Shown: positions 44,039 through 60,637, counted from the stretch's first letter. The stretch is DNA of 64,000 bases from Obrimoposthia wandeli (GCA_977020255.1 CDROCS010001101.1:496001-560000), one strand, 5' to 3'. Notes: generated by a model not told the origin, from the letters alone. Made by a program: numbers and translations.

Positions 44039-44102
44039 ATTTGCTTGAAATACTGGAAATAAAGAAGAGAATAAGTAGCAGCAATGAGTAATTGCTAAAG
44101 GT

Positions 44103-45846: not shown

Positions 45847-45852
45847 GTACGA

Positions 45853-45894
45853 TTAGCGATGAACTGTTAGCGCTTAACTATTAGCGCTTAACTA
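45853..45894. repeat. 14-bp tandem repeat x3 between two stop codons
   Basis: ttagcgatgaactg / ttagcgcttaacta / ttagcgcttaacta. Confidence 0.8.
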
Positions 45895-46158
45895 TCAATC
45901 AGCATTAACGATAATTAATGCTGACTCGAGCTCAAGGTCACTGGCAGTTTTCACGTCTCCGCAATAACCGCTGTTACATTGCTGCGTACAAGGTTTAGAA
46001 CAATGCACACGCTTGTTGCAGCTCCACAAACACAATTGCCAAACTTGCTGCTTAGATTCAGCATCTAAGCAGTTCAAATCAGCGACACACAGATGACCCG
46101 CTTGAATCAACTCTGCCAGTTTATGTGTTGATATACTTAAATTAACCTTGGTCGCCAT
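45895..46158 (-). CDS. Small Cys-rich hypothetical protein (87 aa, 8 Cys), likely Fur-regulated
   Basis: AGGGA SD; LCVADLNCLD..VWQLCLWSC..HCSKPCTQQC..YC; Fur box upstream. Confidence 0.7.
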   Translation of the reverse strand: MATKVNLSISTHKLAELIQAGHLCVADLNCLDAESKQQVWQLCLWSCNKRVHCSKPCTQQCNSGYCGDVKTASDLELESALIIVNAD

Positions 46159-46204
46159 GCTGCTATCCCTATAAACGCTTATAAACTATATCCTAATAAT
46201 AATC

Positions 46205-46223
46205 ACAAATGAGAACTATTATC
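46205..46223. promoter_or_regulatory. Fur box overlapping a minus-strand promoter candidate (TTGATA-18-TATTAT)
   Basis: ACAAATGAGAACTATTATC, 13/19 to consensus. Confidence 0.65.
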
Positions 46224-46334
46224 AATAGGGTTTATCAATTTCCTTTACATTAAATTACAAAGCGTTCGAATAACAGCCTGAGATCAAGCTTTTGCAAGAT
46301 GTACTATGACTAACAGTACGATTTATTAACAGTG

Positions 46335-46880
46335 CTATTGACCATAAAGGTCAGGATATAAAAATGGCGCCATTGCTAATGTAAGCGCTTGGGTATAGTT
46401 ACTCTCGCGTGTGGCATGGCCATTAGTCAATAAGCCAATCGCGCCGCCTTTATGCTTAATATTAACGGTTTTAAATAGTTTATCCATGACAGGACCTAAT
46501 TCTTCCCCATCAAGCAACGACTGATAAATAGGTGCTGGTAAAGGCAATGCAGCACTGCGACCAACAGATTGCTGCGCTTTAGACGCAATCACCACATATG
46601 CAAATGTAGCAGGGCCATCGTCAAGTAGATCAACCCCACCTTCAATAGCAATATAAAAATCCGCGTCAGCATGCTGCTGGCAATACTTAACACGGTTAAT
46701 AGCACCGTCACGGGTTTCTGCGGCATTCATTGGTTGATCCGGTACATTGGAAGGTGCGTTTAGCCCTTCACATTCAACGATACAGTCAGGATATAATTGC
46801 GCAATCACGCTACGTGACGCATTCACTTTTACTGGGTTTTTTGACCCAACCACAACTTTAATTAATTTCTGTTCCATCAT
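46335..46880 (-). CDS. yjjX: Inosine/xanthosine triphosphatase
   Basis: VVGSKNPVKV, VPDQPM..ETRDGAINR, AIEGG, ELGPVMD, KGGAIGLLT. Confidence 0.93.
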   Translation of the reverse strand: MMEQKLIKVVVGSKNPVKVNASRSVIAQLYPDCIVECEGLNAPSNVPDQPMNAAETRDGAINRVKYCQQHADADFYIAIEGGVDLLDDGPATFAYVVIASKAQQSVGRSAALPLPAPIYQSLLDGEELGPVMDKLFKTVNIKHKGGAIGLLTNGHATRESNYTQALTLAMAPFLYPDLYGQ

Positions 46881-47372
46881 TTATAAATTAACTCTTCTTG
46901 ATTGCCAGTAGTGGCTATGCCAATAAGGATTATCCAAACGAGATATGATCACGCCACGACTACTCGACGCATGAAAGAATTGGAATTCATCAACCATGAT
47001 CCCGACGTGACGAACATTCACACCCGTTTTAAAAAACACTAAATCACCTGTCCGTAATTGCTGACGCTTAATCGAGCGACCTACTTTTACTTGCTCTGCG
47101 GTTGTCCGCGGTAGCGATAATGCGAATTGCTGCTCAAAAGTAAGTTTAACCAAAGCTGAACAATCAACACCGCGCTTACTCATCCCGCCCCATTTATGCG
47201 GCGTGCCACGCCAGTCTTTATATTGTGATAACAACAACCTCTGCACATAAACAAGTTCGGCAGTTGGTGCATTAATTTTTGTAGCGCCCTGAGGTTGTTT
47301 TCTTGCACTATTCTGGCTACACCCAGACATGAACAACAACAGTAAAGCACAACAAAACAATTTAACTAGCAT
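46881..47372 (-). CDS. NlpC/P60 peptidoglycan endopeptidase lipoprotein
   Basis: Lipobox MSGC; GVDCSAL, GDLVFF, HVGI, FFHAS. Confidence 0.9.
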   Translation of the reverse strand: MLVKLFCCALLLLFMSGCSQNSARKQPQGATKINAPTAELVYVQRLLLSQYKDWRGTPHKWGGMSKRGVDCSALVKLTFEQQFALSLPRTTAEQVKVGRSIKRQQLRTGDLVFFKTGVNVRHVGIMVDEFQFFHASSSRGVIISRLDNPYWHSHYWQSRRVNL

Positions 47373-47608
47373 TCTATATATCCGTTAGTGTTTAACACTC
47401 TCTATTTAATTCTTGATATTCTACCTTTACGCTATAGCCCAAAACAACCCGTTTATGGCCTTCCACCTAAAATCTCAGTGAGAATACTCAAAATCTACGC
47501 CAAATAGGCACGATTCAATGAATAAAAAATTAAAAAACAAATAAAAATTAAATAATAATGCCTCGATATGACCGTTTATTTGGGGCTAAACACTGTTACA
47601 AGCAACAC

Positions 47609-47625
47609 TAAAGTTACCGCTAACA
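47609..47625. promoter_or_regulatory. 17-bp box shared by both WS/DGAT upstream regions (copy 1)
   Basis: TAAAGTTACCGCTAACA; 16/17 identical to 57375-57391. Confidence 0.6.
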
Positions 47626-47646
47626 TGACACACTGTAACCATCCTT

Positions 47647-47663
47647 AACAGGTCAGACCTCCT
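47647..47663. promoter_or_regulatory. FadR-like site upstream of WS/DGAT-1
   Basis: AACAGGTCAGACCTCCT vs AACTGGTCnGACCAGTT; GGTCnGACC core intact. Confidence 0.6.
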
Positions 47664-47913
47664 TGTTTGTAAAGCTTTTCCTGTATCTCGCTAAATTTAA
47701 CAAAAAACGCAATGAAATAGTTAAGTAACAAGATCTATAATATATTTAATACTATTTTCATACTCTTAAAAGTACATTTAACACCCTGTCACTATTTACA
47801 AATACAAAACAACAAACTAACATATACCCATATAGATATAGAAAAACTACAAAGTAGAGCTTAGTATCTAAACACTTTATTTTATGGATTTATTGCATAG
47901 GGAATTAGATAGC

Positions 47914-49518
47914 ATGCAAGCACTAACGCTAGTTGATATGGGTTTTTTGTACACAGAAACAGTTGCCAGTCCTAAACATGTAGCCGGATTACAAATTTTC
48001 ACGGCTCCTGAGAATTACGAAGGTAACTTTACCCGTGATCTGTTTGACGCATTAATGTCACAGGATGAAATTAAACAACCCTTTAATTTAAAGCTCAAGA
48101 AACAACTTACTGGGCAGTATCACTGGCAAGAAGATAACAACATAGACCTATCTTACCATGTAAGATTTGCGATGTTACCGCAACCAGGCAATGAAAGTCA
48201 GCTACTCCACTTTGTTGAACATCAACATGAAACACTGCTAGATAGAAACCGACCGCTGTGGGAAATGATATTGATTGATGGCTTAGAAGATAACAAGTTC
48301 GCCATTTACTTAAAAGCACACCACGCCTTCACTGACGGTGCCAAAGCTAATCAGCTATTGATGTCTTATTTAAGTAAGAATACTGACGCGCCGATGACTG
48401 CATTTTGGAATATTGAACGCGAAGAAAAAGAAAAAGAACTTGATACCATGCTAACCTCGATTAGCAAGACATCGAAAAAGCTATCAGATCAGGTTAAGTC
48501 AATTCCATCTTTGACTAAACTGACAACTAAGTTGTTGTTCCAAGCTGCAAATGTATATAAAGCAGATATGCCAACCCCGTTTATGGCGCCAAAAACCCCC
48601 TTCTCAGTAAGCCCTAAGCGTGCACGTCGTGCTGCAGTTTCTGCATTGCCGTTATCACGTGTAAAACGTATTGGTAAGATGACTGGCGCAACGATCAATG
48701 ATGTCGTTGTCACTATTTGCGACATGGCTATTCATAACTACCTTGCAAGCAAGAACTTTAACCTTAAAAAGCCCCTTGTTGCGCAAATGCCAATGAGCTT
48801 ACGTGACGCTGGCGATACAGTAACCAACAACCAAGTTGCAATCAGCTTAGTTGAACTGGCTTACCGTGGAGAGTCTCCGCTTGAACGCTTAATGACGATT
48901 AAAGATTCGTGTATCAAACTCAAAAATGAAACACGCCTGCTGACTAAAGAAGCACTCACTAGCTATACCATGGCGAGCCAAGGCCTTGCTGTTGTAAGTG
49001 AGTTTTTAAGCTTAGACACTATATTACCGCCAATGGGTAATGTACTGATTTCAAATGTACCGGGTCCACGTGAACCGCTATATATGATGGGTGCGAAAAT
49101 GGATCAATGTTTTCCTATCTCAGTATTGCCACCAGGTATGTCTCTGAACATTACGCTATACAGCTATAACGGTTTAATTAATGTTGGTTTAGTATCATGT
49201 CGCTCTGCCCTACCCGATTTAACCGATTTGGCTGAATTCGTAAATAGTGCGTTTGCAGAGCTTGAAAATGAAGTACTAACAAGTGCAGCAACATCTGTAA
49301 CAGAACAAATCGCACTACTCGCGATGCCTAAGGGCAATTCGGACATCAAACAAGAAAGTTTAGCGATTATCGAACAAATATTAGCGGATGCAGGCAAGTC
49401 TAAAGCAGTTAAAAATCCAACATTAGATAGCAAAGCAACTCAGCCTGTAAAGCAAGCCGCAGCAGAAAACACAATCACCACTGATACAGCGAATAAAGCT
49501 GTACCGGCATCAGTATAG
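47914..49518 (+). CDS. Wax ester synthase/diacylglycerol acyltransferase 1 (WS/DGAT)
   Basis: LTLVDMGFL..ET..SPKHVAGL, LDRNRPLWE, HHAFTDG catalytic motif, NVLISNVPGP, LNITLYSYNG; ATG at 47914 aligns with the paralog start. Confidence 0.93.
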   Translation: MQALTLVDMGFLYTETVASPKHVAGLQIFTAPENYEGNFTRDLFDALMSQDEIKQPFNLKLKKQLTGQYHWQEDNNIDLSYHVRFAMLPQPGNESQLLHFVEHQHETLLDRNRPLWEMILIDGLEDNKFAIYLKAHHAFTDGAKANQLLMSYLSKNTDAPMTAFWNIEREEKEKELDTMLTSISKTSKKLSDQVKSIPSLTKLTTKLLFQAANVYKADMPTPFMAPKTPFSVSPKRARRAAVSALPLSRVKRIGKMTGATINDVVVTICDMAIHNYLASKNFNLKKPLVAQMPMSLRDAGDTVTNNQVAISLVELAYRGESPLERLMTIKDSCIKLKNETRLLTKEALTSYTMASQGLAVVSEFLSLDTILPPMGNVLISNVPGPREPLYMMGAKMDQCFPISVLPPGMSLNITLYSYNGLINVGLVSCRSALPDLTDLAEFVNSAFAELENEVLTSAATSVTEQIALLAMPKGNSDIKQESLAIIEQILADAGKSKAVKNPTLDSKATQPVKQAAAENTITTDTANKAVPASV

Positions 49519-49526
49519 GGATAACG

Positions 49527-50168
49527 ATGAAAACACGTGACAGGATTTTACAGTGTAGTTTAGAGATGTTTAGCCAATACGGACACGTAAAAGTATCTAC
49601 GGTTGAAATTGCTAACGCGCTAGAAATAAGCCCAGGTAATTTGTATTACCATTTTAATGGTAAAGACCAATTATTAACTGAGCTGTTTTATGAATATGAA
49701 GCCGCTATTAATAAGCTAATGTCATTCTATGAAGATGACGTGCAAGCATTTGAAGATTACTGGGCATACCTGAATATATATGTTGGCCTAATTCAACAAT
49801 ACTCATTCTTCTATCGTGATATGAAAGTTATATTCGATGAGAATAAGCTGTTGAAACGTCGCTTTATGCGTCTCGTTAATAACCATCATAGCTTTTTCTT
49901 AAAAATGCTAACGTCGTTAAACACCAGCAGTGAAATTAAGATGAGTGAAGCGCAGCAAAGTTCGATGGCTGATACAATCTGCTTGATCGCAACTAACTCA
50001 CTCGATACTCAATTGGCTGAAGAAGATTACGATCTTCAAGCGATTACTCAACGCATTGTCTTACGTATTATCATGCTAGTTGAACCTTATTTTTCTAGCG
50101 AAGCAAAAGTGAAATACTTACATGAAGTTGAACAAAACCCGGTTGAAGCAACCAGTTTGTTTAGCTAA
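49527..50168 (+). CDS. TetR-family regulator resembling Pseudomonas PhaD
   Basis: MKTRDRILQCSLEMF..G..VSTVEIANALEISPGNLYYHFNGK, EDYW, IMLVEP; starts 8 bp after the WS/DGAT-1 stop. Confidence 0.85.
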   Translation: MKTRDRILQCSLEMFSQYGHVKVSTVEIANALEISPGNLYYHFNGKDQLLTELFYEYEAAINKLMSFYEDDVQAFEDYWAYLNIYVGLIQQYSFFYRDMKVIFDENKLLKRRFMRLVNNHHSFFLKMLTSLNTSSEIKMSEAQQSSMADTICLIATNSLDTQLAEEDYDLQAITQRIVLRIIMLVEPYFSSEAKVKYLHEVEQNPVEATSLFS

Positions 50169-50187
50169 ATATCGTTAGACTGTAAAT

Positions 50188-50230
50188 AAAAATAGAGTGA
50201 ACAGCCCTTATAATGATTCACTCTATTTTT
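50188..50230 (+). terminator. Terminator after WS1-TetR operon
   Basis: AAAAATAGAGTGAA...TTCACTCTATTTTT. Confidence 0.75.
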
Positions 50231-50444
50231 AATTCCTATTTTTAAATTCTGTTTTTAAACTCGACTTCTCTTACAGTGTAAAACCCCAAAAAATATCTTC
50301 AGTCTGCCCATGGACCCTCCCCCGAAAGTCCGAAATTAAATTCTGCGTTATTAACGTACTTTATATAAAAACTATTTACCTATAATCGTTTAAGGTTGAT
50401 AATCCTATCTTGATAACCATACCATCGATATATAAGGTCGGACG

Positions 50445-51791
50445 ATGCCAGAAAATGACGTTCAAAATGCAGTTGAAGAACTACTAACAAATAATCTTGA
50501 TACATCAGCGCAGCAAGCTTTTATTGAAAAGCTTGAGCATGAAACGTCGCCTGTCGATATGGCCTTATTGTTAGAATCTCTGCCCTTTTTAGAACGTTTA
50601 GAAACCTGGGCACAAATATCTGCCGATATAAAACTGCCGATACTAGTCGAGATGCGTGCAGATGCAGGTGAGTCTATTGTTGATTCGTTAACACATGCAG
50701 AATTACTGACACTTTTTACTGATATTGATGCCAACACATTAGTTGAATTACAAGATATCATTCCCGATCACCATCTTGAAACCGTACTGGCTAAGATGGA
50801 TGAAACTCAGCTATCGCACTACTCGGCTGCGCAACAGTTTAATGATGACGAAGTGGGACATTGGTGTGATCATCAGCCACTTGTTGTTCCGGCTAAAACC
50901 AAAATAAAAGTAGTTTTAAGATTAATTCGCCGTAGTAGTTCATCGCACTGTAACGTGGTGTTTCTCGTTGATAACCGCGGTAATTGGCAGGGTGTTGTTC
51001 GTATCAATCAATTGTTTGGTGCAGATCCGTTATTACGCGTAGCAGAGTTAATTGAAGAGGATTACCTCACCTTAAACGCCAATGAAGATGTCTACATTGC
51101 CGCAGATAAAGTGGCGCAAAGCAATGAGTCCGCGTTACCCGTTATTACGACAGGCGGTTTACTCATCGGGCGTTTAGATATTGGCGCTGCTTATAAACTG
51201 CAAGCTGAACATGCTGAATCACAAATAATGGCAACAGCGGGTCTCGATGAAAACGAAGATCTATTTTCACCCGTTCGTAAAAGTGCTAAGAATCGTGCTA
51301 TTTGGCTGGGCATAAACTTGCTAACCGCATTTTTAGCATCTTGGTTCATCGGTATGTTTGAAGCGACGATCCAACAAGTTGTTGCGCTGGCAGTATTAAT
51401 GCCCGTGGTTGCATCTATGGGCGGCATTGCAGGAAGCCAGACTTTAACCTTGATTGTCCGTGGTTTAGCATTAGGGCATATCTCGATGGCGAACATGAAG
51501 CCTTTGTTATTCAAGGAACTCAAAGTCGCAATCCTCAATGGTATTCTGTGGTCATTAGTGATTGGTTTGGTGACAGGTTACTGGTTTGACGATGTCATGC
51601 TCGGTATCGTTATTGGCTTAGCAATTGTAGCCAATATCATTACAGCGGCACTCGCAGGTGTTTTAGTACCTGTTGCGTTAGATAAAATGAAGATTGACCC
51701 TGCATTATCCGGTTCTGTTATTTTGACAACAGTGACTGACATCATGGGCTTTGTGGTGTTCTTAGGATTGGGTACTATCTTATTACTATAG
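50445..51791 (+). CDS. mgtE: Magnesium transporter MgtE
   Basis: N-terminal domain, CBS pair, RAIWLGINL, LAVLMPVVASMGGIAGSQT, KIDPALSGSVILTTVTD. Confidence 0.95.
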   Translation: MPENDVQNAVEELLTNNLDTSAQQAFIEKLEHETSPVDMALLLESLPFLERLETWAQISADIKLPILVEMRADAGESIVDSLTHAELLTLFTDIDANTLVELQDIIPDHHLETVLAKMDETQLSHYSAAQQFNDDEVGHWCDHQPLVVPAKTKIKVVLRLIRRSSSSHCNVVFLVDNRGNWQGVVRINQLFGADPLLRVAELIEEDYLTLNANEDVYIAADKVAQSNESALPVITTGGLLIGRLDIGAAYKLQAEHAESQIMATAGLDENEDLFSPVRKSAKNRAIWLGINLLTAFLASWFIGMFEATIQQVVALAVLMPVVASMGGIAGSQTLTLIVRGLALGHISMANMKPLLFKELKVAILNGILWSLVIGLVTGYWFDDVMLGIVIGLAIVANIITAALAGVLVPVALDKMKIDPALSGSVILTTVTDIMGFVVFLGLGTILLL

Positions 51792-51857
51792 GTCGTGACT
51801 AATGGATCGTAGCTAATAGATTACGACTATCAGTTACCATTCAAGATCAGACTAAAC

Positions 51858-51897
51858 GCGCCATACCGATAACTGTAAATAAGTATCGGTATGGCGC
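51858..51897. terminator. Hairpin between convergent mgtE and oxidoreductase
   Basis: GCGCCATACCGATA...TATCGGTATGGCGC. Confidence 0.75.
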
Positions 51898-51920
51898 CGT
51901 CAACATCAAAATAATTAAGA

Positions 51921-52961
51921 CTATCTCGGCACAGTTAAAGTCTGACCTAAACGACTGCTTTCCATCGCCAACTCAATCAACTTAATACTCCACAACGCAT
52001 CTTCAGCATTCACTGGCGCTTGGCCTTCGCTATTTATAGAGGCTGCCATTGCTTGGAAGTAATGCTGATAACCACCACGTTCGGTCTGCACAGTTGCAAC
52101 TGTATCTAAAGTATATAAATGACCATATTGCTCTGGTGCTTCATCTGCCCAGCTTGCATCCACCGGCACAACGCCTGCTTTTAAGCGATCTTCTTGTGGA
52201 TCTAAGCCGTATTTTTCATAACTCGCTTTATTGCCTTTGACACTAAAACGCTTATTGGGTCCAGCACTAAACAGATCACAATGTAACGTGGCAATGTGGT
52301 CTGGGTAATGTAATACAAGATTAAAGTAATCGATGTTTGTAGAGCCTTCTCTCATGATTAAGCATTGCGCCGTGATCGCATTGGGTAATCCGAACAACTG
52401 CAATGTTTGATCTATTAGATGCGGGCCTAAATCAAATAGTATACCGCCACCAGTGGTCGATTGTTCACGCCAGCGCTGACGCACTTCCGGTCTAAAGCGG
52501 TCGAAATGAGATTCAAAACATTTAACCTCACCTAAACTGCCGTCTTCAATGAGCTTTTTAACAGTAAGAAAGTCCCCATCCCAACGACGATTATTATAGA
52601 CACTTAAAACAAGCCCTTTTTCTGCTGCTAATGCGATCAGTGCTTCACCATCTGCAACATTAATAACAAAGGGCTTTTCGATAATAACGTGTTTGTTCTG
52701 TTCCAACGCCGCTTTAGCTAATGAGAAATGCACATCGTTAGGCGCAGTGATAATCACCAATTCCGCATCAGATTGTTGTAATAACGATTCTGCTGTTAAG
52801 AAGTGTTCTACCTGAGGAAAATCAGTTGTCACAGCTTCACGTTGGCTACTACTGATTGAAGTTAGCTCAAATTCAGCCAAGTGACTAATGAAAGGAATAT
52901 GAAATGTTTTTGCAGAAAATCCGTAACCGATAACGGCCGTTTTGATTGGTTTTAAGTTCAT
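51921..52961 (-). CDS. Gfo/Idh/MocA oxidoreductase (YdgJ-like)
   Basis: IGYGFSAKTFH, EKPF, NRRWDGDF, GGGILFDLGPHLIDQ, KYGLDPQE. Confidence 0.9.
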   Translation of the reverse strand: MNLKPIKTAVIGYGFSAKTFHIPFISHLAEFELTSISSSQREAVTTDFPQVEHFLTAESLLQQSDAELVIITAPNDVHFSLAKAALEQNKHVIIEKPFVINVADGEALIALAAEKGLVLSVYNNRRWDGDFLTVKKLIEDGSLGEVKCFESHFDRFRPEVRQRWREQSTTGGGILFDLGPHLIDQTLQLFGLPNAITAQCLIMREGSTNIDYFNLVLHYPDHIATLHCDLFSAGPNKRFSVKGNKASYEKYGLDPQEDRLKAGVVPVDASWADEAPEQYGHLYTLDTVATVQTERGGYQHYFQAMAASINSEGQAPVNAEDALWSIKLIELAMESSRLGQTLTVPR

Positions 52962-53201
52962 GCTTACTCTCTTAACAGATCCAGCTACAGCAGTTGAATA
53001 TCATAGGCTTCAATCATAACCCCCTTATTGTCATTATTAAATAACCAATGTTTAGACGGTATTATTGCCGTATAACTAAACAGCATCGAAGATTAAGTAC
53101 CTATAAAGACTAAACCGACTCAAGTTTATTTCCTTAATAACCTGTATTCCGCTATAATTCGCACCTTTAATTTTTCGTATTAATTTACCCCAAGGCTTAT
53201 T

Positions 53202-53750
53202 ATGAATCTTTCAGCTAAAACCGTTGTTGTGATTGCAATTGGTGCTGCTTTATATGGCATCGGCGGACTACCAATGTTTGGTATTCCAGTGTTTGCAAAC
53301 ACGACACTTAAACCCGCGATGGCAGTGCTTGCACTCTTCTCGGTCTTATTTGGTCCATTAGTTGGTTTCTTAGTAGGCTTTATCGGTCATTGGGTAACAG
53401 ATTTATTCTCTGGCTGGGGTGTTTGGTTAACGTGGGTATTAGGCTCTGGTATCGTTGGTCTTATTATCGGTTTGTTCCCTAAGTTGACACAAGGTCGCTT
53501 AGAGAAAGGCGAGTTCTCGATGAAAGACATGGCGCTCTTTGTTGTACTTGCTTTAGTCGGTAACACTGTCGGTTACGGTGTATCAGCGCTACTCGATACA
53601 CTGCTTTATGCAGAACCATTTACCAAAGTAATGACGCAACTAACCATCATTGCAGCAGGTAACACGATGTTAATCGCTGTCGTAGGCTACATATTGCTAA
53701 CCGCTTTTGCCAAACGTAAAAAACAAAGCCGCAATTTGACCGAGGGTTAA
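53202..53750 (+). CDS. ECF transporter S component (UPF0397 family)
   Basis: [46 protein letters not shown]. Confidence 0.88.
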
Positions 53751-53756
53751 CCCACA

Positions 53757-55451
53757 ATGACCATCGAATTTTCTGACTTCTCTTTTAAATATGCTTCGCA
53801 AGATAAAGCGACACTCAAAGGCATAAATCTAAGGATAGAGAAAGGAGAGAAAATTGTCATTATTGGTCCAAGTGGGAGTGGTAAATCTACCCTTGGACAA
53901 TGCTTAAACGGCCTGATTCCGCATGCCATAAAAGGCGAGATGTCTGGCAGCTTAACCATTAATGATACGCCTGTATCTGGGTTATGCATGCAAGACTATA
54001 GCGAATCGGTAGGCACTGTGTTGCAAGACACAGACAGCCAATTCGTTGGTTTAAGTATTGGTGAAGATATTGCATTTGCGCTTGAGAATAACATGATTTC
54101 TCAAGCCGAAATGCTACCTATCGTACAGAAAACTGCCGCGATGGTTGATCTTGATGATTTACTCGATCATTCACCTTATGCATTATCTGGTGGTCAAAAG
54201 CAGCGCGTATCACTCGCTGGTATTCTGGTTGACGATACTGACATCTTGCTATTTGATGAACCATTGGCCAGCCTAGATCCAAAAACAGGTAAAGCAACCA
54301 TCGAGATTATCGACCAGTTGCATAAAGACACAGGCAAAACGGTTATCATTATCGAACATCGTCTCGAAGATGTACTCCACTGTCATATCGACCGCGTGAT
54401 CTTAATGGAACGTGGCCAAATCATTGCCGATATGTCGCCTAATGAATTAATCGTATCACCCTTACTACAAGTTCATGGTATCCGCGAACCACTCTATATT
54501 TCGGCATTAAAAGCGGCGAACTGCCCTATTGCTGTTACAGATAATCCAGCTTATATCGACAAAATGGATCTACAGCAATACCAAACACCATTAACCAATT
54601 GGTTTAATGCACAAGCACCGATCGTGCAGCCACAAGCAACAGAAACATTACTTGAGATTAATGACTTAACGTATTCTTACACTGGCGAAAAGAACGCCCT
54701 TGAAGATATTTCATTTAGTATTAATCGTGGTGAATTTGTTTCTATCTTGGGAAAAAATGGTTCGGGTAAATCAACGATCACTAAGCTAATCATGGGCGTT
54801 ATAGCACCTGATGCGGGTCAAATTAAGCTGAATGGTGAAGATATCGCAGATCTCTCTATCTTTGAGCGTGCTCAAAAGGTCGGTGTGGTGATGCAAAACC
54901 CAAATCACATGATCTCTAATCATATGATTTTTGATGAAATCGCCTTTGGTCTACGTAACCGTGGCCACGATGAAGCGTTTGTAGAAGAGAAAGTACTGCA
55001 CGTACTGGGTTTATGCGGTCTGATGAAATATCGTCATTGGCCAATTGAAGCACTTAGCTACGGTCAGAAAAAACGTGTCACGATTGCATCTATCCTAGCA
55101 CTCGAGCCAGAATTGCTGATTTTAGATGAGCCAACAGCAGGACAAGATCATCGTAACTATACCTCGATGCTGTCGTTCATTAAAACGCTGAACAAAACGC
55201 TGGGCATTACAGTGCTGATTATCTCTCACGATATGCACCTCGTATTAGAATACACCACGCGTTCAATTGTCATCGCTGAAAGTAAATTGATTGCCAATGC
55301 GCCAGTTTCACAAGTGTTCAGTGATCCTGTACTACTTGACCGTGCGAATTTAAAAATAACCAGTCTGTATACACTTGCCAATGCCGTGGGTATAAACAAT
55401 ACCGATGGTTTCATGCAGCAATTTATTAAATCTGAAGTGGCACCGTCATAA
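53757..55451 (+). CDS. ECF transporter tandem ATPase (A-A')
   Basis: Two NBDs: GPSGSGKST/LSGGQ and GKNGSGKST/LSYGQ. Confidence 0.93.
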   Translation: MTIEFSDFSFKYASQDKATLKGINLRIEKGEKIVIIGPSGSGKSTLGQCLNGLIPHAIKGEMSGSLTINDTPVSGLCMQDYSESVGTVLQDTDSQFVGLSIGEDIAFALENNMISQAEMLPIVQKTAAMVDLDDLLDHSPYALSGGQKQRVSLAGILVDDTDILLFDEPLASLDPKTGKATIEIIDQLHKDTGKTVIIIEHRLEDVLHCHIDRVILMERGQIIADMSPNELIVSPLLQVHGIREPLYISALKAANCPIAVTDNPAYIDKMDLQQYQTPLTNWFNAQAPIVQPQATETLLEINDLTYSYTGEKNALEDISFSINRGEFVSILGKNGSGKSTITKLIMGVIAPDAGQIKLNGEDIADLSIFERAQKVGVVMQNPNHMISNHMIFDEIAFGLRNRGHDEAFVEEKVLHVLGLCGLMKYRHWPIEALSYGQKKRVTIASILALEPELLILDEPTAGQDHRNYTSMLSFIKTLNKTLGITVLIISHDMHLVLEYTTRSIVIAESKLIANAPVSQVFSDPVLLDRANLKITSLYTLANAVGINNTDGFMQQFIKSEVAPS

Positions 55452-56389
55452 TGCAGAACAACACTAATAGCGAAAGCACACTTAATAAAAGCAATATGAA
55501 TAAAAATACAGTTAATAACGACATGAAGAAAAAGCATAAAAGTAGCATCAATAAAACCAAGAAAATTGATTTTGGTATTAACTATGTCAATACCAACTCA
55601 GCCCTACATAAGCTTAATGGCGTCACTAAGTTTGTGTTGTTTTTAGCTTGGGTTACCGTGGTTTTAACGACGTTTGATTTACGCCTTATTCTCGCGCTTA
55701 TTATTACCGGCGGTACCTTACTTAAATTAACTAAAGTACCGTTTTCAGTTTATAAACCGCTATTAATTGCCACAGCCAGTGTGCTTAGTATTAATGCCTT
55801 ATTCATGTTCTTGTTAGCACCACAGCAAGGCGAAGAATATATTGGCTCAAGCACAGTGTTATTGCCGTTATGGGGTGATTACTCCCTAACACAAGAGACG
55901 TTATATTACTTACTGACGGTCACATTGAAATACTTCAGCATGTTTCCGATTGCATTAGTCTTTGTGTTTACCACGCATCCGACTGAGTTTGCGGCAAGTT
56001 TAAATCGTCTCGGTGTACCCTACAAAATTGCCTATGCGGTTAGTTTAACATTGCGCTATTTACCAGATGTTAAAAATGATTTCGTCAACATCATGCACGC
56101 ACAACAAGCACGTGGCGTCGATTTATCTAAGAATGTCTCGGTACTATCGCGTATTAAAAATGTCGCGAAGATCTTAGGTCCATTGATTTTCTCAAGCCTA
56201 GATCGCGCCGACGAGATCTCAAATGCAATGACGCTACGTGGCTTTGGCCATAACAAAATGCGTACTTGGTACAGCTTAAAAGCAATGACTAAACAGGACT
56301 ATACTGTGATGGGGTTAATCGGTTTAGTGGTTATATTAGCGGTAATTAAACGTGCGATGGCAACCGAATTATTCTGGTATCCATTCTAG
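55451..56389 (+). CDS. ECF transporter T component with low-complexity N-terminal extension
   Basis: HKLNGVTKF, LTLRYLP, AQQARG, AMTLRGFG. Confidence 0.9.
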   Translation: MQNNTNSESTLNKSNMNKNTVNNDMKKKHKSSINKTKKIDFGINYVNTNSALHKLNGVTKFVLFLAWVTVVLTTFDLRLILALIITGGTLLKLTKVPFSVYKPLLIATASVLSINALFMFLLAPQQGEEYIGSSTVLLPLWGDYSLTQETLYYLLTVTLKYFSMFPIALVFVFTTHPTEFAASLNRLGVPYKIAYAVSLTLRYLPDVKNDFVNIMHAQQARGVDLSKNVSVLSRIKNVAKILGPLIFSSLDRADEISNAMTLRGFGHNKMRTWYSLKAMTKQDYTVMGLIGLVVILAVIKRAMATELFWYPF

Positions 56390-56391
56390 TG

Positions 56392-57306
56392 ATGTTTTCT
56401 AGCGACATAGCTTGTACTGATATATCTTGCACCGACATACATGACGGAGTTAACGACAAGCTTACCTTAGCTAGCAATGAAATCCATTTATGGTCTGTTG
56501 TTCCGAAAAATATCCAACAGCCTGCATTATTACAAGCTTATAGTCAGCTTTTATCACCTGACGAAATCACAAAACAGCAACGTTTTCGGTTTGAAAAAGA
56601 TCGCCACAATGCATTAATCACCCGTGCTTTCATCCGTGATTTGTTATCTTATTATGCAGATGTATCGCCTGCAGATTGGCAGTTTGTAAAAGGGAGCAAA
56701 GATAAACCTGAGATTGTTAAGCCCCCGCTACCACTGCGCTTTAATATTAGTCATACCGATAACTTGATCATTTGTGCCGTTATGCTTCATGACGATATCG
56801 GTTGTGATGTTGAAAATACTCAGCGCAGCAGCGATGTTTTGAGCATTGCTAAATATTCGTTCGCGGATATTGAAGTCGATGATTTACTTGCTCAGCCCAC
56901 AGCGCAACAAACCAGTCGTTTCTTTGATTACTGGACGTTAAAAGAGTCTTATATCAAAGCATGGGGTTTAGGGTTATCAATTCCGTTGAAAGACTTCAGC
57001 TTCACATTACCCGCTAACCACCAGCCTGATCATCTGCAAGAACATTTAAAAGAACATTTAAAAGAACATCAACAAGAGCATCTGCATTGTATTGATGATA
57101 TTAAATTAAGCTTTGCAGCTCATCGCATTGATGATGCCAATGTTTGGCGTAATTGGTTGTTTTACCCCAATACCACCCATCGTGTGGCGATATCTGTACG
57201 TGCGACAAGTAATAATCAGCATACTGAATATAAAATGCGCTTTTTTAACTCGACTCCTCTAGTTAATATCACTGAAACACTTATTTTTAAACCGGACACT
57301 AAATAG
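56392..57306 (+). CDS. pfaE: Sfp-type 4'-phosphopantetheinyl transferase, PUFA-synthase activator PfaE type
   Basis: EIHLW, KDRHNALITRAF, LRFNISHT, IGCDVE, FFDYWTLKESYIKAWGLGLSIPL; resembles Moritella/Colwellia PfaE from recall; GTG at 56389 is an alternative start. Confidence 0.85.
   Translation: MFSSDIACTDISCTDIHDGVNDKLTLASNEIHLWSVVPKNIQQPALLQAYSQLLSPDEITKQQRFRFEKDRHNALITRAFIRDLLSYYADVSPADWQFVKGSKDKPEIVKPPLPLRFNISHTDNLIICAVMLHDDIGCDVENTQRSSDVLSIAKYSFADIEVDDLLAQPTAQQTSRFFDYWTLKESYIKAWGLGLSIPLKDFSFTLPANHQPDHLQEHLKEHLKEHQQEHLHCIDDIKLSFAAHRIDDANVWRNWLFYPNTTHRVAISVRATSNNQHTEYKMRFFNSTPLVNITETLIFKPDTK
57031..57087 (+). repeat. In-frame 12-bp tandem repeat in pfaE (HLQE-HLKE-HLKE-HQQE-HLH)
   Basis: catctgcaagaa / catttaaaagaa / catttaaaagaa / catcaacaagag. 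Confidence 0.85.
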
Positions 57307-57374
57307 TATTCACTTTCACTCGAAATAGCCTACCAGCGTTATAGCGACAAACAGCATTAAAAACTAACCACTAA

Positions 57375-57391
57375 TAAAGTTACCGTTAACA
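57375..57391. promoter_or_regulatory. 17-bp box shared by both WS/DGAT upstream regions (copy 2)
   Basis: TAAAGTTACCGTTAACA. Confidence 0.6.
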
Positions 57392-57586
57392 ACCTCGTCA
57401 ATAACAAATCCTTCTAGTTTAATATCTCATTTTCAACGCCAAAACACATGCTACTAACCTCTCAATATTAAATGTACATTTCAAATATTCAATTTAAACC
57501 TTTAAATTCAGGCATTTAAAATCACGTCAGTAAGTCACATATTATGTCGTTTAGGTAAATTAATGTCAAAATGATATATTCCTTTG

Positions 57587-57604
57587 GGAGTACACGTGTA
57601 TCAT
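57587..57604. promoter_or_regulatory. FabR-like site upstream of WS/DGAT-2
   Basis: GGAGTACACGTGTATCAT, 13/18 to AGCGTACACGTGTACGCT; GTACACGTGTA core intact. Confidence 0.55.
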
Positions 57605-57716
57605 GTACATAACTTTAACATCCGTGACAGTAAGTCATAACATCAAATGCGGTGATATGCGCGGTACGACTCAATCGGACGCAAACTATCAATCTCATTA
57701 AAAATAGGAAATGACT

Positions 57717-59258
57717 ATGGAAGCACTCACGTTAGTTGATATGGGTTTTTTATACACTGAAACAGTAACAAGCCCAAAACATGTCGCAGGATTACAAATA
57801 TTCTCAACACCAGAAAACTATCAAGGCAACTTTAGTCGAGACCTATTTGATAATTTAATGTCACAACAAGATGTTAAAAAACCATTCAACCAAAAACTCA
57901 AGAAACAAATTACCGGCCAATACTTCTGGCAAGAAGATGACAATATTGATTTGTCATACCATGTACGTTTCGCGATGCTGCCACAGCCAGGTAATGACAA
58001 TCAATTACTCAGCTTTGTTGAACATCAACATGAAACCTTACTTGATCGTAACCGCCCGTTATGGGAAATGATCCTTATTGATGGTTTAGCAGACAACAAG
58101 TTTGCTATCTACGTTAAAGTGCATCACGCATTTACAGATGGTGCTAAAGCCAATCAATTATTAATGGCTTACCTCAGTAAAAATGCCGAATCACCAATGA
58201 CAGCATTTTGGTCAGTTGATCGCCCGCAAAAAGAACGCGTAGCGAAAAGCGCATTAACACTGCTCACTGATACATCGAAATTGGTATCAGGACACGTTAA
58301 GTCAATTCCATCATTAACTAAGTTAACAACAAAACTACTGTTCCAAGCAACGAACATGTATAAAGCCGATATGCCAACTCCCTTCATGGCACCTAAAACC
58401 CCGTTTTCAGTCAGTCCAAAACGCGCACGTCGCGCAGCAATGACATCACTGCCATTGGCACGAGTGAAAACATTAGGCCGTGTTACAGGCGCAACGATTA
58501 ACGATGTAGTCGTTACTGTTTGCGATATGGCGATCCATAACTACCTAGAAACACGTAATGTTGTACTTAAAAAGCCGCTTGTTGCACAAATGCCAATGAG
58601 TTTACGTGATGCATCAGATACAGAATCAAACAACCAAGTTGCGATTAGTTTAGTTGAATTAGCCTATGCAGGTGAGCGTCCATTAGAACGATTAATGACG
58701 GTTAAAGAGTCATGTCGAAAACTAAAAAGCGAAACGAAACTGTTAACCAAAGAAGCATTAACGAGTTATACATTAGCCAGCCAAGGTTTAGCCGCAGCCA
58801 GTGAATTACTTAACCTAGATACCATCTTGCCACCGATGGGCAATGTATTAATCTCTAACGTCCCGGGGCCAAGTAAAGCCTTGTACATGATGGGTGCGAA
58901 AATGGATAAGTGCTACCCAATATCAGTATTACCACCGGGCATGTCTTTAAACATTACCTTGTATAGCTACAACGGTTCAATCCACGTCGGTCTTGTTGCT
59001 TGTCGTTCTGCCCTGCCTGATTTAACCGAATTAGCAGATTACATTGATGATGCTTTCGCAGCACTTGAAAATGAAGTATTGGATTGCGCAATCGAAAGTG
59101 TAACAGATCATATTCAATTATTATCATCGTCGCAAAGTAATCAAAATATCAAGCAGGAAAGTATTAATACAGTTGCTAATATGGCTAGCAGTGCGAAAAA
59201 AATAAGCTCTCGATCTAAGGTTGATCATGAAGATTCACGATTATGTGAAACAGCTTAA
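57717..59258 (+). CDS. Wax ester synthase/diacylglycerol acyltransferase 2 (WS/DGAT)
   Basis: Close paralog of WS1; HHAFTDG intact; AGGA SD spacing favours ATG at 57717 over 57711. Confidence 0.93.
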   Translation: MEALTLVDMGFLYTETVTSPKHVAGLQIFSTPENYQGNFSRDLFDNLMSQQDVKKPFNQKLKKQITGQYFWQEDDNIDLSYHVRFAMLPQPGNDNQLLSFVEHQHETLLDRNRPLWEMILIDGLADNKFAIYVKVHHAFTDGAKANQLLMAYLSKNAESPMTAFWSVDRPQKERVAKSALTLLTDTSKLVSGHVKSIPSLTKLTTKLLFQATNMYKADMPTPFMAPKTPFSVSPKRARRAAMTSLPLARVKTLGRVTGATINDVVVTVCDMAIHNYLETRNVVLKKPLVAQMPMSLRDASDTESNNQVAISLVELAYAGERPLERLMTVKESCRKLKSETKLLTKEALTSYTLASQGLAAASELLNLDTILPPMGNVLISNVPGPSKALYMMGAKMDKCYPISVLPPGMSLNITLYSYNGSIHVGLVACRSALPDLTELADYIDDAFAALENEVLDCAIESVTDHIQLLSSSQSNQNIKQESINTVANMASSAKKISSRSKVDHEDSRLCETA

Positions 59259-59356
59259 ATAAGTAAAGTCAGCGCAGCAGTAAGGAATAGATAACTAGGG
59301 TAATAGAATAAGCAATAAGTAATAAAAAAAAGAAGAAGTAGAAGTAGAAAAATAAA

Positions 59357-59400
59357 GCTCAAGGAGTTGGTCGACATATACAGCGACTAACTGCTTGAGC
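59357..59400. terminator. Hairpin between WS2 and convergent small gene
   Basis: GCTCAAG-G-AGTTGGTCG...CGACTAACT-G-CTTGAGC. Confidence 0.65.
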
Positions 59401-59417
59401 TAATCGCCTTATTTATT

Positions 59418-59651
59418 TTAGCTTAATGGTGCTAAAACACGGTGTAGGTGGTCTGCAATTTCAATACCACTATCAGTTAAATAACCGCCATCGTCTCGTG
59501 TAATAAGACCTTTATCAAAAAGTGATTTAGCAGCACTGACTATTGAAGGGCCGGCTTCATTGTGAACCTTAATGCCTTCTAAGTGAGATTTTGTTGGGAA
59601 TTTAGCCAGTAATTTCATTTCTTCAAACAGTGTATCAGAATAGTTATTCAT
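59418..59651 (-). CDS. TIGR02647-family small winged-helix-like protein
   Basis: LLAKFP..HLEGIKVH....AAKSLFDKGLIT..DGGYLTDSGIE. Confidence 0.8.
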   Translation of the reverse strand: MNNYSDTLFEEMKLLAKFPTKSHLEGIKVHNEAGPSIVSAAKSLFDKGLITRDDGGYLTDSGIEIADHLHRVLAPLS

Positions 59652-59860
59652 AATTGCTCGCTTTTCTTAAATAGGAGAAGTTTCATCATAGAGCCTTCAA
59701 AGAAGATTGCAAAATTAATAATTGCGTAAGTAGGTATAGATCAAAAAAAACCTCAATAAAACGTACACTTGAGATTAGTGTAGGTTACAATTCAAGCAAT
59801 TACCTTCATTCCACAACACTTACTGTTTATTTAATGCCAATTAATGCTGAAATAGTCCAG

Positions 59861-60478
59861 TTATGATAATAAAGACGACGCAATGACTTCATATAATAAC
59901 GCGTGACCCGCACTGTTTGGGTGTAAACCATCAGCCGTTAAGTACGCTTCTTTATCCGTATTAAATGGCGTGTAAACATCAATTAATGCCACATCGTACT
60001 TCACAGACAAGTCTAATAAGGCCTTATTATAACGATTGATTGTTGCATCATCGCGAATACGCTTATTGATATTGGGAATGCCATCTAGGTGAGCAGCGAT
60101 TGGTGTCACATTGATTAATACCACAGCGGCGCCTTTCGCAAGCGCAAATTCAATGCAGTGGCTTAAATTATGAATATAAGATCCGATAACGACAAGGTGC
60201 TCACCGTCTTGGCAGGCGAGATCATTGGCACCATAACCAAATAACACAGTATTGTTATTATCAGCACTGAGCCGAGTAATACATTCAGGTTGAAAACGTT
60301 GCATCAGACCATCAGTGGTTTCGCCGCTAATGCCCATATTAAAAACACTAACTCTGTCTTGATTTGTTTCCAAAAACTGTTTAATCAGACGCGTTTTAAT
60401 ACGGTCAGCCCAGCCGCCATAAACAGCGTCACTTTCACCGCGTGTAATGCTATCACCAAAACAAATTATGCTCGCCAT
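59861..60478 (-). CDS. SGNH/GDSL hydrolase
   Basis: CFGDSIT, NMGISGETT, GANDL, DGLHPN blocks. Confidence 0.9.
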   Translation of the reverse strand: MASIICFGDSITRGESDAVYGGWADRIKTRLIKQFLETNQDRVSVFNMGISGETTDGLMQRFQPECITRLSADNNNTVLFGYGANDLACQDGEHLVVIGSYIHNLSHCIEFALAKGAAVVLINVTPIAAHLDGIPNINKRIRDDATINRYNKALLDLSVKYDVALIDVYTPFNTDKEAYLTADGLHPNSAGHALLYEVIASSLLS

Positions 60479-60637
60479 GTACCCTAACTCCGAAAATATG
60501 ATGTAATTATCTGTGCAAGCAAAATACTACAAATCTATTTATAACACTATAGATAAAACGATGCTTAAAACTCTGCATAAAACCACACAGAAAACGGCAT
60601 ACATAGCCCAACACATAGTTAATGTATATGTCGGACT

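What the first reader, a model, noticed from the sequence alone, without database searches (positions are those of the whole stretch)
47400..59258. Candidate PUFA-linked neutral-lipid (wax ester/TAG) storage system: WS/DGAT x2 + PhaD-like regulator + pfaE
Seen: two intact WS/DGAT paralogs (both HHAFTDG) about 10 kb apart. WS1 is followed 8 bp later by a TetR; WS2 lies directly downstream of a PfaE-type PPTase. Their upstream regions share a 17-bp box and carry fatty-acid regulator-like sites. Established: PfaE activates the Pfa PUFA synthase ACPs, and WS/DGATs make wax esters or TAG in Acinetobacter, Marinobacter and Rhodococcus. Inference: this Moritella-like organism may route de novo PUFA (EPA/DHA) or imported fatty acids into storage lipids under a dedicated regulator. 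I do not know of such a coupled module being described.
Basis: partly seen in the sequence, partly recalled or inferred. Interest (0 to 1): 0.8.

Follow-up and report, generated by a model that had tools for sequence, protein, structure and literature searches.

The report
Wax-ester synthase genes with PhaD-like regulator
A Moritella chromosome segment carries two real wax-ester/triacylglycerol synthase genes, one paired with a regulator related to the PhaD bioplastic-storage regulator, but their position next to the PUFA-activating gene pfaE looks like a genus-specific accident of gene order, not a PUFA-storage module.

Summary
There are two intact WS/DGAT paralogs (77% identical, both HHAFTDG), a TetR gene 8 bp after WS1, a PfaE-type PPTase 404 bp before WS2, and a shared 17-bp upstream box (16/17).

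Supported: the TetR is a true PhaD homolog (36% identity to the TetR inside a Pseudomonas phaC1-phaZ-phaC2 cluster). WS/DGAT+TetR pairing is old and recurrent. 22 of 27 non-Moritella WS loci in the same order have it, and 11 of those also carry a two-domain fatty acyl-CoA reductase (Corallincola, Ferrimonas, Plesiomonas, Aeromonas, Alteromonas, Thalassotalea). All Moritella genomes searched carry four WS/DGAT paralogs, apart from two incomplete MAGs. All five tested also have an unlinked reductase, so wax ester synthesis is plausible.

Not supported: the PUFA link. No PPTase lies near any of 55 other WS loci. Outside Moritellaceae only 1 of 26 WS-positive genomes has pfaD. pfaE is fused to an upstream ECF transporter operon. 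WS2 has its own conserved promoter region, and RNA-library contigs leave a hole between pfaE and WS2.

The shared box matches the gluconate repressor (GntR, LacI family) operator found at the Moritella gnt locus.

The scan had noted the PhaD-like TetR before on this same window (s1-250338).

The parts
47609..47625 (+). Upstream box 1 (TAAAGTTACCGCTAACA), a GntR/LacI-type operator-like palindrome about 300 bp before WS1
   Evidence: 16/17 match to box 2, with 0 of 200 shuffles reaching it. Conserved in WS1 orthologs. The same motif flanks gntK and the TRAP transporter gene next to gntR in 4-5 Moritella genomes.
47647..47659 (+). FadR-like site (AACAGGTCAGACC; palindromic core GGTCAGACC)
   Evidence: Conserved in 4 of 6 WS1 orthologs and degraded in the two deep-sea-clade loci. 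The consensus comparison is from memory, and binding is untested.
47914..49518 (+). WS1, a WS/DGAT acyltransferase (the ORF can be extended to 47884; HHAFTDG catalytic motif)
   Evidence: PF03007 2e-61, PF06974 1.5e-29, TIGR02946 383 bits against a cut-off of 310. Motif. Orthologs start at MQALTL.
49527..50168 (+). PhaD-family TetR regulator, 8 bp after WS1 and probably co-transcribed with it
   Evidence: PF00440 + PF13972. 36% identity, E 4e-43, to the TetR inside a Pseudomonas phaC1-phaZ-phaC2 cluster. Falls with WS-adjacent TetRs and with PhaD, apart from the kbl/tdh/waaA-linked paralog clade.
53202..56389 (+). ECF transporter genes (S component 53202-53750, fused A-A' ATPase 53757-55451, T component 55451-56389). 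This is the transcription unit that pfaE belongs to, not part of the lipid module.
   Evidence: PF07155/NF010182, TIGR04520/04521, PF02361. The T stop overlaps the PPTase start. RNA-library contigs bridge the junction.
56389..57306 (+). PfaE-type (Sfp-type) phosphopantetheinyl transferase
   Evidence: PF01648 + PF22624. P0-like IRDLLS, FNISHT, GCDVE and WTLKESYIK motifs (motif definitions in PMC2901515). It is one of only two ACPS-domain genes in M. dasanensis and JT01; the other is presumed to be AcpS. 78% identical to the M. marina ATCC 15381 ortholog.
57375..57391 (+). Upstream box 2 (TAAAGTTACCGTTAACA), a GntR-type operator-like site 69 bp after the pfaE stop and about 330 bp before WS2
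   Evidence: 13 of 14 positions identical to the gntK operator of M. marina read on the other strand.
57540..57710 (+). Conserved WS2 promoter/leader block, with an extended -10-like TGATATATT at 57572-57580
   Evidence: Nearly invariant across 7 Moritella WS2 loci while DNA further upstream is variable. Contigs from two RNA libraries begin at 57624 and 57630.
57711..59258 (+). WS2, a WS/DGAT acyltransferase and the genus-specific paralog of WS1
   Evidence: PF03007 1e-61, PF06974 5e-32, TIGR02946 402 bits. Full-length alignment to the Marinobacter WS/DGAT structure 6CHJ, E 2e-84. 97% identical to M. marina ATCC 15381.

Best explanation
The segment holds a wax-ester/TAG synthase system, not a PUFA-coupled module.

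WS1 and the TetR form a two-gene unit that descends from an old WS/DGAT + PhaD-family TetR module, often with a two-domain fatty acyl-CoA reductase. That module is widespread in the Alteromonas/Aeromonas/Moritella order. In Moritella the reductase sits elsewhere in the genome and the synthase has multiplied to four paralogs. WS2 is the closest copy of WS1.

Inferred mechanism: the reductase makes fatty alcohols from acyl-CoA, and WS1/WS2 esterify alcohols (or diacylglycerol) with acyl-CoA. The TetR, like PhaD, senses a lipid/CoA metabolite and controls WS1 (autoregulated operon) and possibly WS2. Both WS promoters also carry a GntR-type operator, which would tie expression to gluconate/sugar-acid availability. 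WS1 may additionally answer to FadR.

pfaE belongs to the upstream ECF-transporter transcription unit and is WS2's neighbour only by gene order.

Shown here: gene identities, homologies, synteny statistics, motif conservation. Inferred: all regulation, the products, and co-transcription.
For: **Gene identities:**

**The TetR is a PhaD homolog.**
- 36% identity, E 4e-43, to the TetR located phaC1-phaZ-phaC2-[TetR]-phasin in Pseudomonas.
- A Hyphomonas homolog also lies beside phaC and a phasin gene.
- PhaD sequences nest among WS-adjacent TetRs. They sit apart from a 100/100-supported clade of paralogs that lie beside kbl/tdh/waaA.

**WS-TetR linkage.**
- 22 of 27 non-Moritella WS loci in the order sample have this TetR within about 2.5 kb, and 11 also have the reductase.
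- Three of the five negatives are on contigs of 5 kb or less.
- WS and TetR trees show matching clades.
- Closer relatives keep WS-TetR at 9-bp spacing.

**Reductase.** A 665-aa protein with NAD_binding_4 + adh_short is present in all 5 Moritella genomes tested and in the window's assembly.

**Paralogs.** Four WS paralogs occur in 11 of 13 Moritellaceae genomes. WS1 and WS2 lie 8-21 kb apart in the 10 genomes where both are on one contig.

**Against operonic pfaE-WS2.**
- The spacer is 404 bp here and about 360-2090 bp in other species.
- WS2 has its own conserved promoter block.
- The ECF-T stop overlaps the pfaE start.
- Two RNA-library runs give contigs over ECF through the pfaE 5' part and over WS2 from 57624/57630, with nothing at 56977-57623.

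**GntR box.** The only conserved intergenic instances in 5 genomes are WS1, WS2, gntK and the gluconate TRAP gene beside gntR. Published E. coli GntR sites are ATGTTACCGATAACAG and ATGTTACCCGTAACAT (PMC10450161).
Against: - No product chemistry, expression or binding data exist for Moritella. I found no paper on its neutral lipids.
- The TetR operator was not identified. No conserved 6-N8-6 dyad like PhaD's was found, and no motif is shared with the reductase promoter.
- WS-TetR linkage is lineage-limited: only 1 of 28 WS loci in a class-wide sample has it.
- The GntR-like boxes lie about 250-300 bp upstream of the likely promoters, which is unusual for a LacI-type repressor. Genome-wide motif counts equal the control.
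- The RNA evidence comes from assembled contigs of one study. A hole in such data is weak evidence, and DNA carry-over cannot be excluded.
- pfaE-WS2 adjacency is conserved in every Moritella genome examined, so a functional reason is not excluded.
Confidence: 0.7

Rival explanations
1. pfaE and WS2 (with WS1/TetR) form a functional unit that routes DHA/EPA made by the Pfa synthase into wax esters or TAG under a dedicated regulator.
For: - pfaE-WS2 adjacency and orientation are kept in all Moritella genomes examined.
- Moritellaceae is essentially the only lineage in the order sample that has both pfa genes and WS/DGAT, so PUFA-CoA is at least an available substrate.
- Both genes appear in the same RNA libraries.
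Against: - Adjacency is seen only within one genus, where the whole 20-kb neighbourhood is syntenic.
- No PPTase lies within about 7-9 kb of 27 + 28 other WS loci, nor beside the WS genes of closer relatives.
- 25 of 26 WS-positive genomes outside the family lack pfaD, and 72 of 73 pfaD-positive genomes lack WS.
- pfaE is coupled to the ECF operon, and WS2 has its own promoter region.
- pfaABCD lie about 456 kb away.
- A review states that bacterial PUFA end up in phospholipids (PMC4882568).
Confidence: 0.08
2. The WS/DGAT paralogs are not storage enzymes. They would act as an acyl-CoA/fatty-alcohol sink or a membrane-homeostasis device (cold or pressure adaptation, detoxifying surplus imported fatty acids), with little lipid-body formation.
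For: - Four paralogs in a psychrophilic/piezophilic genus with no reported lipid inclusions.
- A FadR-like site upstream of WS1.
- A report that pressure changes wax ester unsaturation in Marinobacter (PMC10384521).
Against: - The regulator is homologous to a storage-polymer regulator.
- In one relative the WS-TetR pair sits directly after the glycogen operon glgB-glgP-glgC-glgA, and a full reductase is present in Moritella. Both fit classical storage.
- No direct data exist either way.
Confidence: 0.12
3. The shared 17-bp box is the operator of the adjacent PhaD-like TetR rather than of GntR. Its likeness to the gnt operators would then be coincidental.
For: - The box is shared by exactly the two WS promoters.
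- TetR regulators commonly bind palindromes near their own operon.
Against: - The identical motif flanks gntK and the gluconate TRAP transporter beside a GntR gene (399.8 bits to the GntR equivalog) in 4-5 genomes.
- It matches published E. coli GntR sites (PMC10450161).
- Relatives that keep WS-TetR pairs lack the box, so it does not travel with the TetR.
- PhaD operators are 6-N8-6 dyads (PMC7590123), not this 12-14-bp contiguous palindrome.
Confidence: 0.2

Closest known systems
Pseudomonas putida pha cluster regulator PhaD (phaC1-phaZ-phaC2-phaD, phaIF)
   Same: - Same protein family: PF00440 + PF13972, 36% identity over 194 residues to a Pseudomonas PhaD-position protein.
- Same placement directly after the last storage-synthase gene on the same strand.
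- PhaD nests among WS-linked TetRs in the tree.
- PhaD is an activator thought to sense a CoA intermediate of beta-oxidation (PMC7590123), which would suit an acyl-CoA-consuming synthase.
   Different: - The partner enzyme is a WS/DGAT acyltransferase, not a PHA synthase.
- No phaC, phaZ or phasin genes are nearby.
- No 6-N8-6 operator was found.
- Activator or repressor role is unknown.
Marinobacter/Acinetobacter wax ester pathway (WS/DGAT such as Ma1/AtfA plus fatty acyl-CoA reductase of the Maqu_2507 type)
   Same: - WS2 aligns end to end with the solved Marinobacter (6CHJ, E 2e-84) and Acinetobacter (7NXG, E 6e-77) enzymes, with the catalytic HHxxxDG intact.
- Moritella has a 665-aa NAD_binding_4 + SDR reductase.
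- WS/DGAT next to Maqu_2507-like genes has been noted in sediment metagenomes (PMC10351704).
   Different: - In Moritella the reductase is unlinked.
- There are four synthase paralogs, with 50-80-residue C-terminal tails.
- The PhaD-type TetR partner is not mentioned in the papers I could search.
- The products in Moritella are unknown.
pfaEABCD PUFA synthase cluster (Shewanella type) and the separate pfaE of Moritella marina MP-1
   Same: - The PPTase has the Sfp-type domains and a P0-like motif typical of PfaE (PMC2901515).
- As published for M. marina MP-1, pfaE lies at a locus distinct from pfaABCD (PMC4882568).
   Different: - Here pfaE is fused to an ECF transporter operon.
- Nothing ties it mechanistically to the WS/DGAT next door.
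GntR (LacI family) gluconate regulon of E. coli/Pseudomonas
   Same: The box core GTTACCGnTAAC matches the E. coli gntT site ATGTTACCGATAACAG and the consensus ATGTTACCCGTAACAT (PMC10450161). It also matches the sites beside Moritella gntR-gntK-TRAP.
   Different: To my knowledge, storage-lipid synthase genes are not known GntR targets. The sites lie far upstream of the presumed promoters.

Membership tests
WS/DGAT (wax ester synthase/diacylglycerol acyltransferase) | Catalytic domain PF03007 plus C-terminal domain PF06974; TIGR02946 above its cut-off | tested here: met
   WS1 scores 383 bits and WS2 402 bits against a cut-off of 310; both Pfam domains are full length.
WS/DGAT (wax ester synthase/diacylglycerol acyltransferase) | Active-site motif HHxxxDG | tested here: met
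   HHAFTDG in both proteins, aligned to the motif of the solved Marinobacter enzyme 6CHJ.
WS/DGAT (wax ester synthase/diacylglycerol acyltransferase) | Acyl-CoA:alcohol or acyl-CoA:diacylglycerol acyltransferase activity | not testable with these tools
   Needs an enzyme assay or lipid analysis.
PfaE-type PPTase | Sfp-type PPTase domains | tested here: met
   PF01648 5e-17 and PF22624 5.5e-10. Best NCBIfam match is HetI, below its cut-off.
PfaE-type PPTase | P0 motif (L/V)Rx(L/V)LS upstream of a split P1 (PMC2901515) | tested here: inconclusive
   IRDLLS is present, with Ile in place of Leu/Val. FNISHT, GCDVE and WTLKESYIK follow. I had no alignment to reference PfaE proteins.
PfaE-type PPTase | The Sfp-type PPTase available to serve pfaABCD in the genome | tested here: met
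   M. dasanensis and JT01 have only two ACPS-domain genes: this ortholog and a second one presumed to be AcpS. pfaA and pfaD are present.
PhaD-family TetR regulator | TetR_N HTH plus PF13972 C-terminal domain, with sequence similarity to the TetR inside pha clusters | tested here: met
   36% identity, E 4e-43, to the Pseudomonas protein at the phaD position. A Hyphomonas homolog lies beside phaC and a phasin gene. Tree.
PhaD-family TetR regulator | Encoded in a PHA gene cluster and controlling pha promoters | tested here: not met
   No phaC, phaZ or phasin gene in the region; the neighbour is a WS/DGAT. It is a homolog with a different partner, not a PhaD in the strict sense.
PhaD-family TetR regulator | Operator of two inverted 6-bp half sites 8 bp apart; activator function | tested here: inconclusive
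   No conserved 6-N(6-10)-6 dyad upstream of WS1 or WS2. Function is not testable here.
pfaE-WS2 operon / coupled module | Co-transcription, or linkage conserved beyond close relatives | tested here: not met
   - Spacer is 404 bp here and 0.36-2.1 kb elsewhere.
- WS2 has its own conserved promoter block.
- RNA contigs leave a hole at 56977-57623.
- 0 of 55 other WS loci have a PPTase.
- Relatives lack the adjacency.
GntR (LacI-family) regulon member | Operator matching the organism's own gnt-locus operators | tested here: met
   Box cores are AGTTACCGCTAACA (WS1) and AGTTACCGTTAACA (WS2). The sites beside gntK and the TRAP gene are TGTTACCGTTAACA and AGTTACCGGTAACA. The regulator is confirmed as GntR.
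GntR (LacI-family) regulon member | Binding by GntR and a response to gluconate | not testable with these tools
   Needs gel-shift or reporter assays.

The most novel reading that the evidence does not exclude
Moritella, which is unusual in its order for combining a Pfa PUFA synthase with four WS/DGATs and a fatty acyl-CoA reductase, really does deposit DHA in wax esters or TAG. WS2 would be kept beside pfaE because the two are used together. That would be a bacterial PUFA-storage route not described so far.
Probability: 0.08. Interest if true: 0.75.

Novelty: new variant of a known kind. Interest (0 to 1): 0.42.

Why it matters
The enzymes and the PPTase are ordinary members of known families.

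What may be new is the regulatory pairing. Relatives of PhaD, until now a PHA-cluster regulator, are the habitual neighbours of wax-ester synthase and acyl-CoA reductase genes in Moritella, Alteromonas, Thalassotalea, Corallincola, Ferrimonas, Aeromonas and Plesiomonas. That would make this TetR subfamily a general regulator of hydrophobic carbon stores. It would also give a handle on how wax ester/TAG synthesis is switched on in marine bacteria, which is poorly known.

It also predicts that the DHA model organism M. marina makes wax esters, possibly in response to gluconate. That is cheap to test. Whether DHA enters those lipids stays open but is unlikely on present evidence.

Tried and rejected
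- **Box outside Moritella.** I looked for the 17-bp box in 27 non-Moritella WS loci and in closer relatives. It is absent.
- **Genome-wide enrichment of the box.** Counts equal the reversed-pattern control. Other recurrent hits lie inside coding genes.
- **Motif shared with the reductase promoter.** None found.
- **Other conserved words shared by the WS1 and WS2 upstream regions.** Only short AT-rich 7-mers.
- **PhaD-style 6-N8-6 dyads.** None conserved in Moritella, and none recognisable in the Pseudomonas pha promoters by my simple scan.
- **Rfam on 44000-64000.** No riboswitch or other RNA family.
- **Phyletic profile of the TetR.** Uninformative at E 1e-12, because a second paralog beside kbl/tdh/waaA is widespread. 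This was resolved with trees instead.
- **Generality of WS-TetR linkage across Gammaproteobacteria.** Rejected: 1 of 28 loci.
- **Literature.** Nothing found on Moritella neutral lipids or on a TetR regulator of wax ester genes.
- **Promoter and terminator consensus scan.** No enrichment over shuffles.

Full report
**What is in the sequence.** ORF listing and family scans give this gene order on the + strand unless marked:
- NlpC/P60 peptidase (46881-47372, -)
- WS1 (47884/47914-49518)
- TetR (49527-50168)
- MgtE (50445-51791)
- GFO/IDH/MocA oxidoreductase (51921-52961, -)
- ECF transporter S, fused A-A' and T components (53202-56389)
- Sfp-type PPTase (56389-57306)
- WS2 (57711-59258)
- GDSL hydrolase (59861-60478, -)
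- TPR-GGDEF protein (60638-62653, -)

WS1 and WS2 are full-length WS/DGATs, 77% identical, each with HHAFTDG. WS2 aligns end to end with the solved Marinobacter and Acinetobacter enzymes. The TetR start lies 8 bp after the WS1 stop. The PPTase start codon overlaps the stop of the ECF T gene, and WS2 begins 404 bp after the PPTase stop.

**Whose genome.** WS2 is 97% identical to the Moritella marina ATCC 15381 protein. The window is contig C1101 of a 1.35-Gb mixed assembly that holds several bacterial genomes, including at least three Moritella strains. pfaA lies on the same contig about 456 kb from pfaE. That agrees with the published statement that M. marina MP-1 pfaE lies apart from pfaABCD (PMC4882568). 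In M. dasanensis and strain JT01 the ortholog of this PPTase is one of only two ACPS-domain genes, so it must serve the Pfa synthase. It has the P0-like motif IRDLLS described for PfaE proteins (PMC2901515).

**Synteny within the genus.**
- The whole stretch WS1-TetR ... ECF-PPTase-WS2-GDSL is syntenic in M. dasanensis, M. marina, PE36, JT01 and MAGs.
- Eleven of the 13 Moritellaceae genomes have four WS/DGAT paralogs: WS2 at 86-97% identity to the window's WS2, WS1 at about 76%, a third at about 56% and a fourth at about 40%. The two exceptions, with one and three, are incomplete MAGs.
- WS1 and WS2 lie 8-21 kb apart wherever both are on one contig.
- The PPTase-WS2 spacer varies from about 360 bp to about 2.1 kb.

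**Is pfaE-WS a module? No evidence beyond gene order in one genus.**
- I sampled 401 genomes of the same GTDB order. 39 have a WS/DGAT and 84 have pfaD.
- Outside Moritellaceae only one of the 26 WS-positive genomes has pfaD, where about five would be expected by chance.
- I fetched the 27 non-Moritella WS loci with about 9 kb on each side. None has a PPTase homolog even at E < 1.
- The same holds for 28 WS loci from a class-wide sample.
- Three metagenomic or assembly contigs from closer relatives (WS 66-74% identical) also lack a PPTase beside WS.
- Upstream of WS2, the proximal 170 bp are almost invariant across seven species and contain an extended -10-like element. DNA further upstream is variable.
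- In two metatranscriptome runs of one study, contigs from a near-identical strain cover the ECF genes and run 345-361 nt into pfaE. Others begin at 57624 and 57630 and cover WS2. Nothing lies on 56977-57623, while a DNA-type run covers everything.
- Contigs cannot prove transcript ends. Still, the picture fits ECF-pfaE as one unit and WS2 as another.

**What the conserved module is.**
- In 22 of the 27 non-Moritella WS loci a homolog of this TetR (27-33% identity) lies within about 2.5 kb. Three of the five exceptions are contigs of 5 kb or less.
- In 11 loci a 665-aa-type fatty acyl-CoA reductase (NAD_binding_4 + short-chain dehydrogenase) is there too.
- Exact-sequence look-ups name the hosts: Corallincola, Ferrimonas lipolytica, Plesiomonas shigelloides and Aeromonas for reductase-TetR-WS; Alteromonas, Thalassotalea and others for TetR-WS.
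- The WS tree and the TetR tree show the same three clades, so the pairs have stayed together for a long time.
- A second, widespread paralog of the TetR sits beside kbl/tdh/waaA and forms its own 100/100 clade. The window's TetR is not in that clade.
- The linkage is lineage-limited. In the class-wide sample only 1 of 28 WS loci has such a TetR.
- All five Moritella genomes tested have the reductase at an unlinked locus. A 99%-identical copy is in the window's assembly.

Outside the Moritella group the best named relatives are 203-210-aa proteins of Pseudomonas and Hyphomonas. The Pseudomonas one lies in phaC1-phaZ-phaC2-[TetR]-phaF/phaI, exactly the phaD position. The Hyphomonas one lies between phaC and a phasin gene. 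The pairwise alignment gives 36% identity over 194 residues, E 4e-43. PhaD proteins nest among the WS-linked TetRs in the tree.

PhaD is a TetR-family activator of the pha operons. It is thought to bind a CoA intermediate of beta-oxidation, and its operators have two 6-bp inverted half sites 8 bp apart (PMC7590123). I could not find such a dyad here. The analogy is phaC2-phaD against WS1-TetR. It suggests a metabolite-sensing regulator of the storage synthase, but this is inference.

**The shared box.**
- Searching five Moritella genomes for the 14-bp core with one mismatch gave no excess over a control pattern.
- However, only four places are intergenic and conserved between genomes: upstream of WS1, upstream of WS2, and two sites 815 bp apart at another locus.
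- That locus is gnd - gntR (LacI family, 399.8 bits to the GntR equivalog) - gntK - TRAP transporter, with the sites in front of gntK and the transporter.
- The other recurrent hits are inside coding genes.
- The core GTTACCGnTAAC equals the published E. coli GntR sites (PMC10450161).
- Relatives with WS-TetR pairs lack the box, so it does not belong to the TetR.

I therefore read it as a GntR-type operator acquired by both WS promoters in Moritella. The caveat is that it sits about 250-300 bp upstream of the likely promoters.

A FadR-like core upstream of WS1 is kept in four of six orthologs. A FabR-like palindrome upstream of WS2 is unique to this strain. Both consensus comparisons rest on my memory of the E. 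coli sites.

**Verdict.** The interpretation splits in two. A neutral-lipid synthase system with a dedicated PhaD-type regulator is well supported by comparative evidence, and to my knowledge and searches it is undescribed. WS/DGAT next to Maqu_2507-like reductases has been noted before (PMC10351704). The PUFA coupling through pfaE is not supported. It remains possible only because Moritella happens to own both pathways. No paper in the searchable library reports neutral lipids in Moritella, and a review places bacterial PUFA in phospholipids (PMC4882568). The interest is moderate: ordinary enzymes, a possibly new regulatory pairing, and an easy experimental test.

Noticed in passing
window 53202-57306: pfaE is translationally coupled to a three-gene ECF transporter: an S component of the riboflavin type (NF010182, 243 bits), a fused A-A' ATPase and a T component. 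The T stop and PPTase start overlap in GTGATG. In M. dasanensis and M. marina the genes also abut, while in PE36, JT01 and MAGs the aligned parts are 240-470 bp apart. RNA-library contigs bridge the junction. No riboswitch was found upstream.
   Followed up: partly
window 56432-56444: The N-terminal region of PfaE has a short repeat (DI.CTDI...). A related strain in RNA libraries carries a 21-nt (7-codon) insertion there, so repeat number varies between strains.
   Followed up: no
window 57541-57569 (- strand): An 11/12 match to the sigma-70 consensus (TTGACA-17-CATAAT) points away from WS2 towards the pfaE 3' end, inside the block conserved in all WS2 orthologs. It could be an antisense or small-RNA promoter, or simply the reverse reading of the WS2 promoter region.
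   Followed up: no
G000 contigs C6776 and C321 (loci L005-L008): The assembly holds five pfaA loci. The one on C6776 is riddled with stop codons (TGA, TAG and TAA) and the one on C321 has two TGA. One bacterium in the mixture therefore seems to carry a decaying PUFA synthase gene.
   Followed up: no
G000:C5135:125474-129596 (L014, L035): Another bacterium in the same assembly has a WS/DGAT (36% identical to WS1, 38% to WS2) with a reductase gene (59% identical to the Moritella one) 1.3 kb away on the opposite strand. This is the clustered form of the pathway.
   Followed up: partly
L093:1880-12286: In a relative (WS 69% and TetR 69% identical) the WS-TetR pair lies directly downstream of glgB-glgP-glgC-glgA. 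Genes for carbohydrate and lipid stores sit side by side.
   Followed up: no
L040 (Plesiomonas shigelloides), L058-L062 (Aeromonas spp.): Reductase-TetR-WS/DGAT clusters occur in Plesiomonas and several Aeromonas species. I do not know these genera as wax ester producers.
   Followed up: partly
window 44839-45846: A 335-aa pyridine-nucleotide-disulfide-oxidoreductase-like protein matches only the middle and dimerisation parts of the family. It is conserved in Moritella at 74-85% identity. Another first-stage note (s1-250306) also flagged it.
   Followed up: no
window 59861-60478 (-): A 205-aa GDSL/SGNH hydrolase lies convergent to WS2 and is kept there in all Moritella genomes checked. It is absent from WS loci of other genera. 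It may be a lipase/esterase, but nothing links it to the WS genes beyond position.
   Followed up: partly
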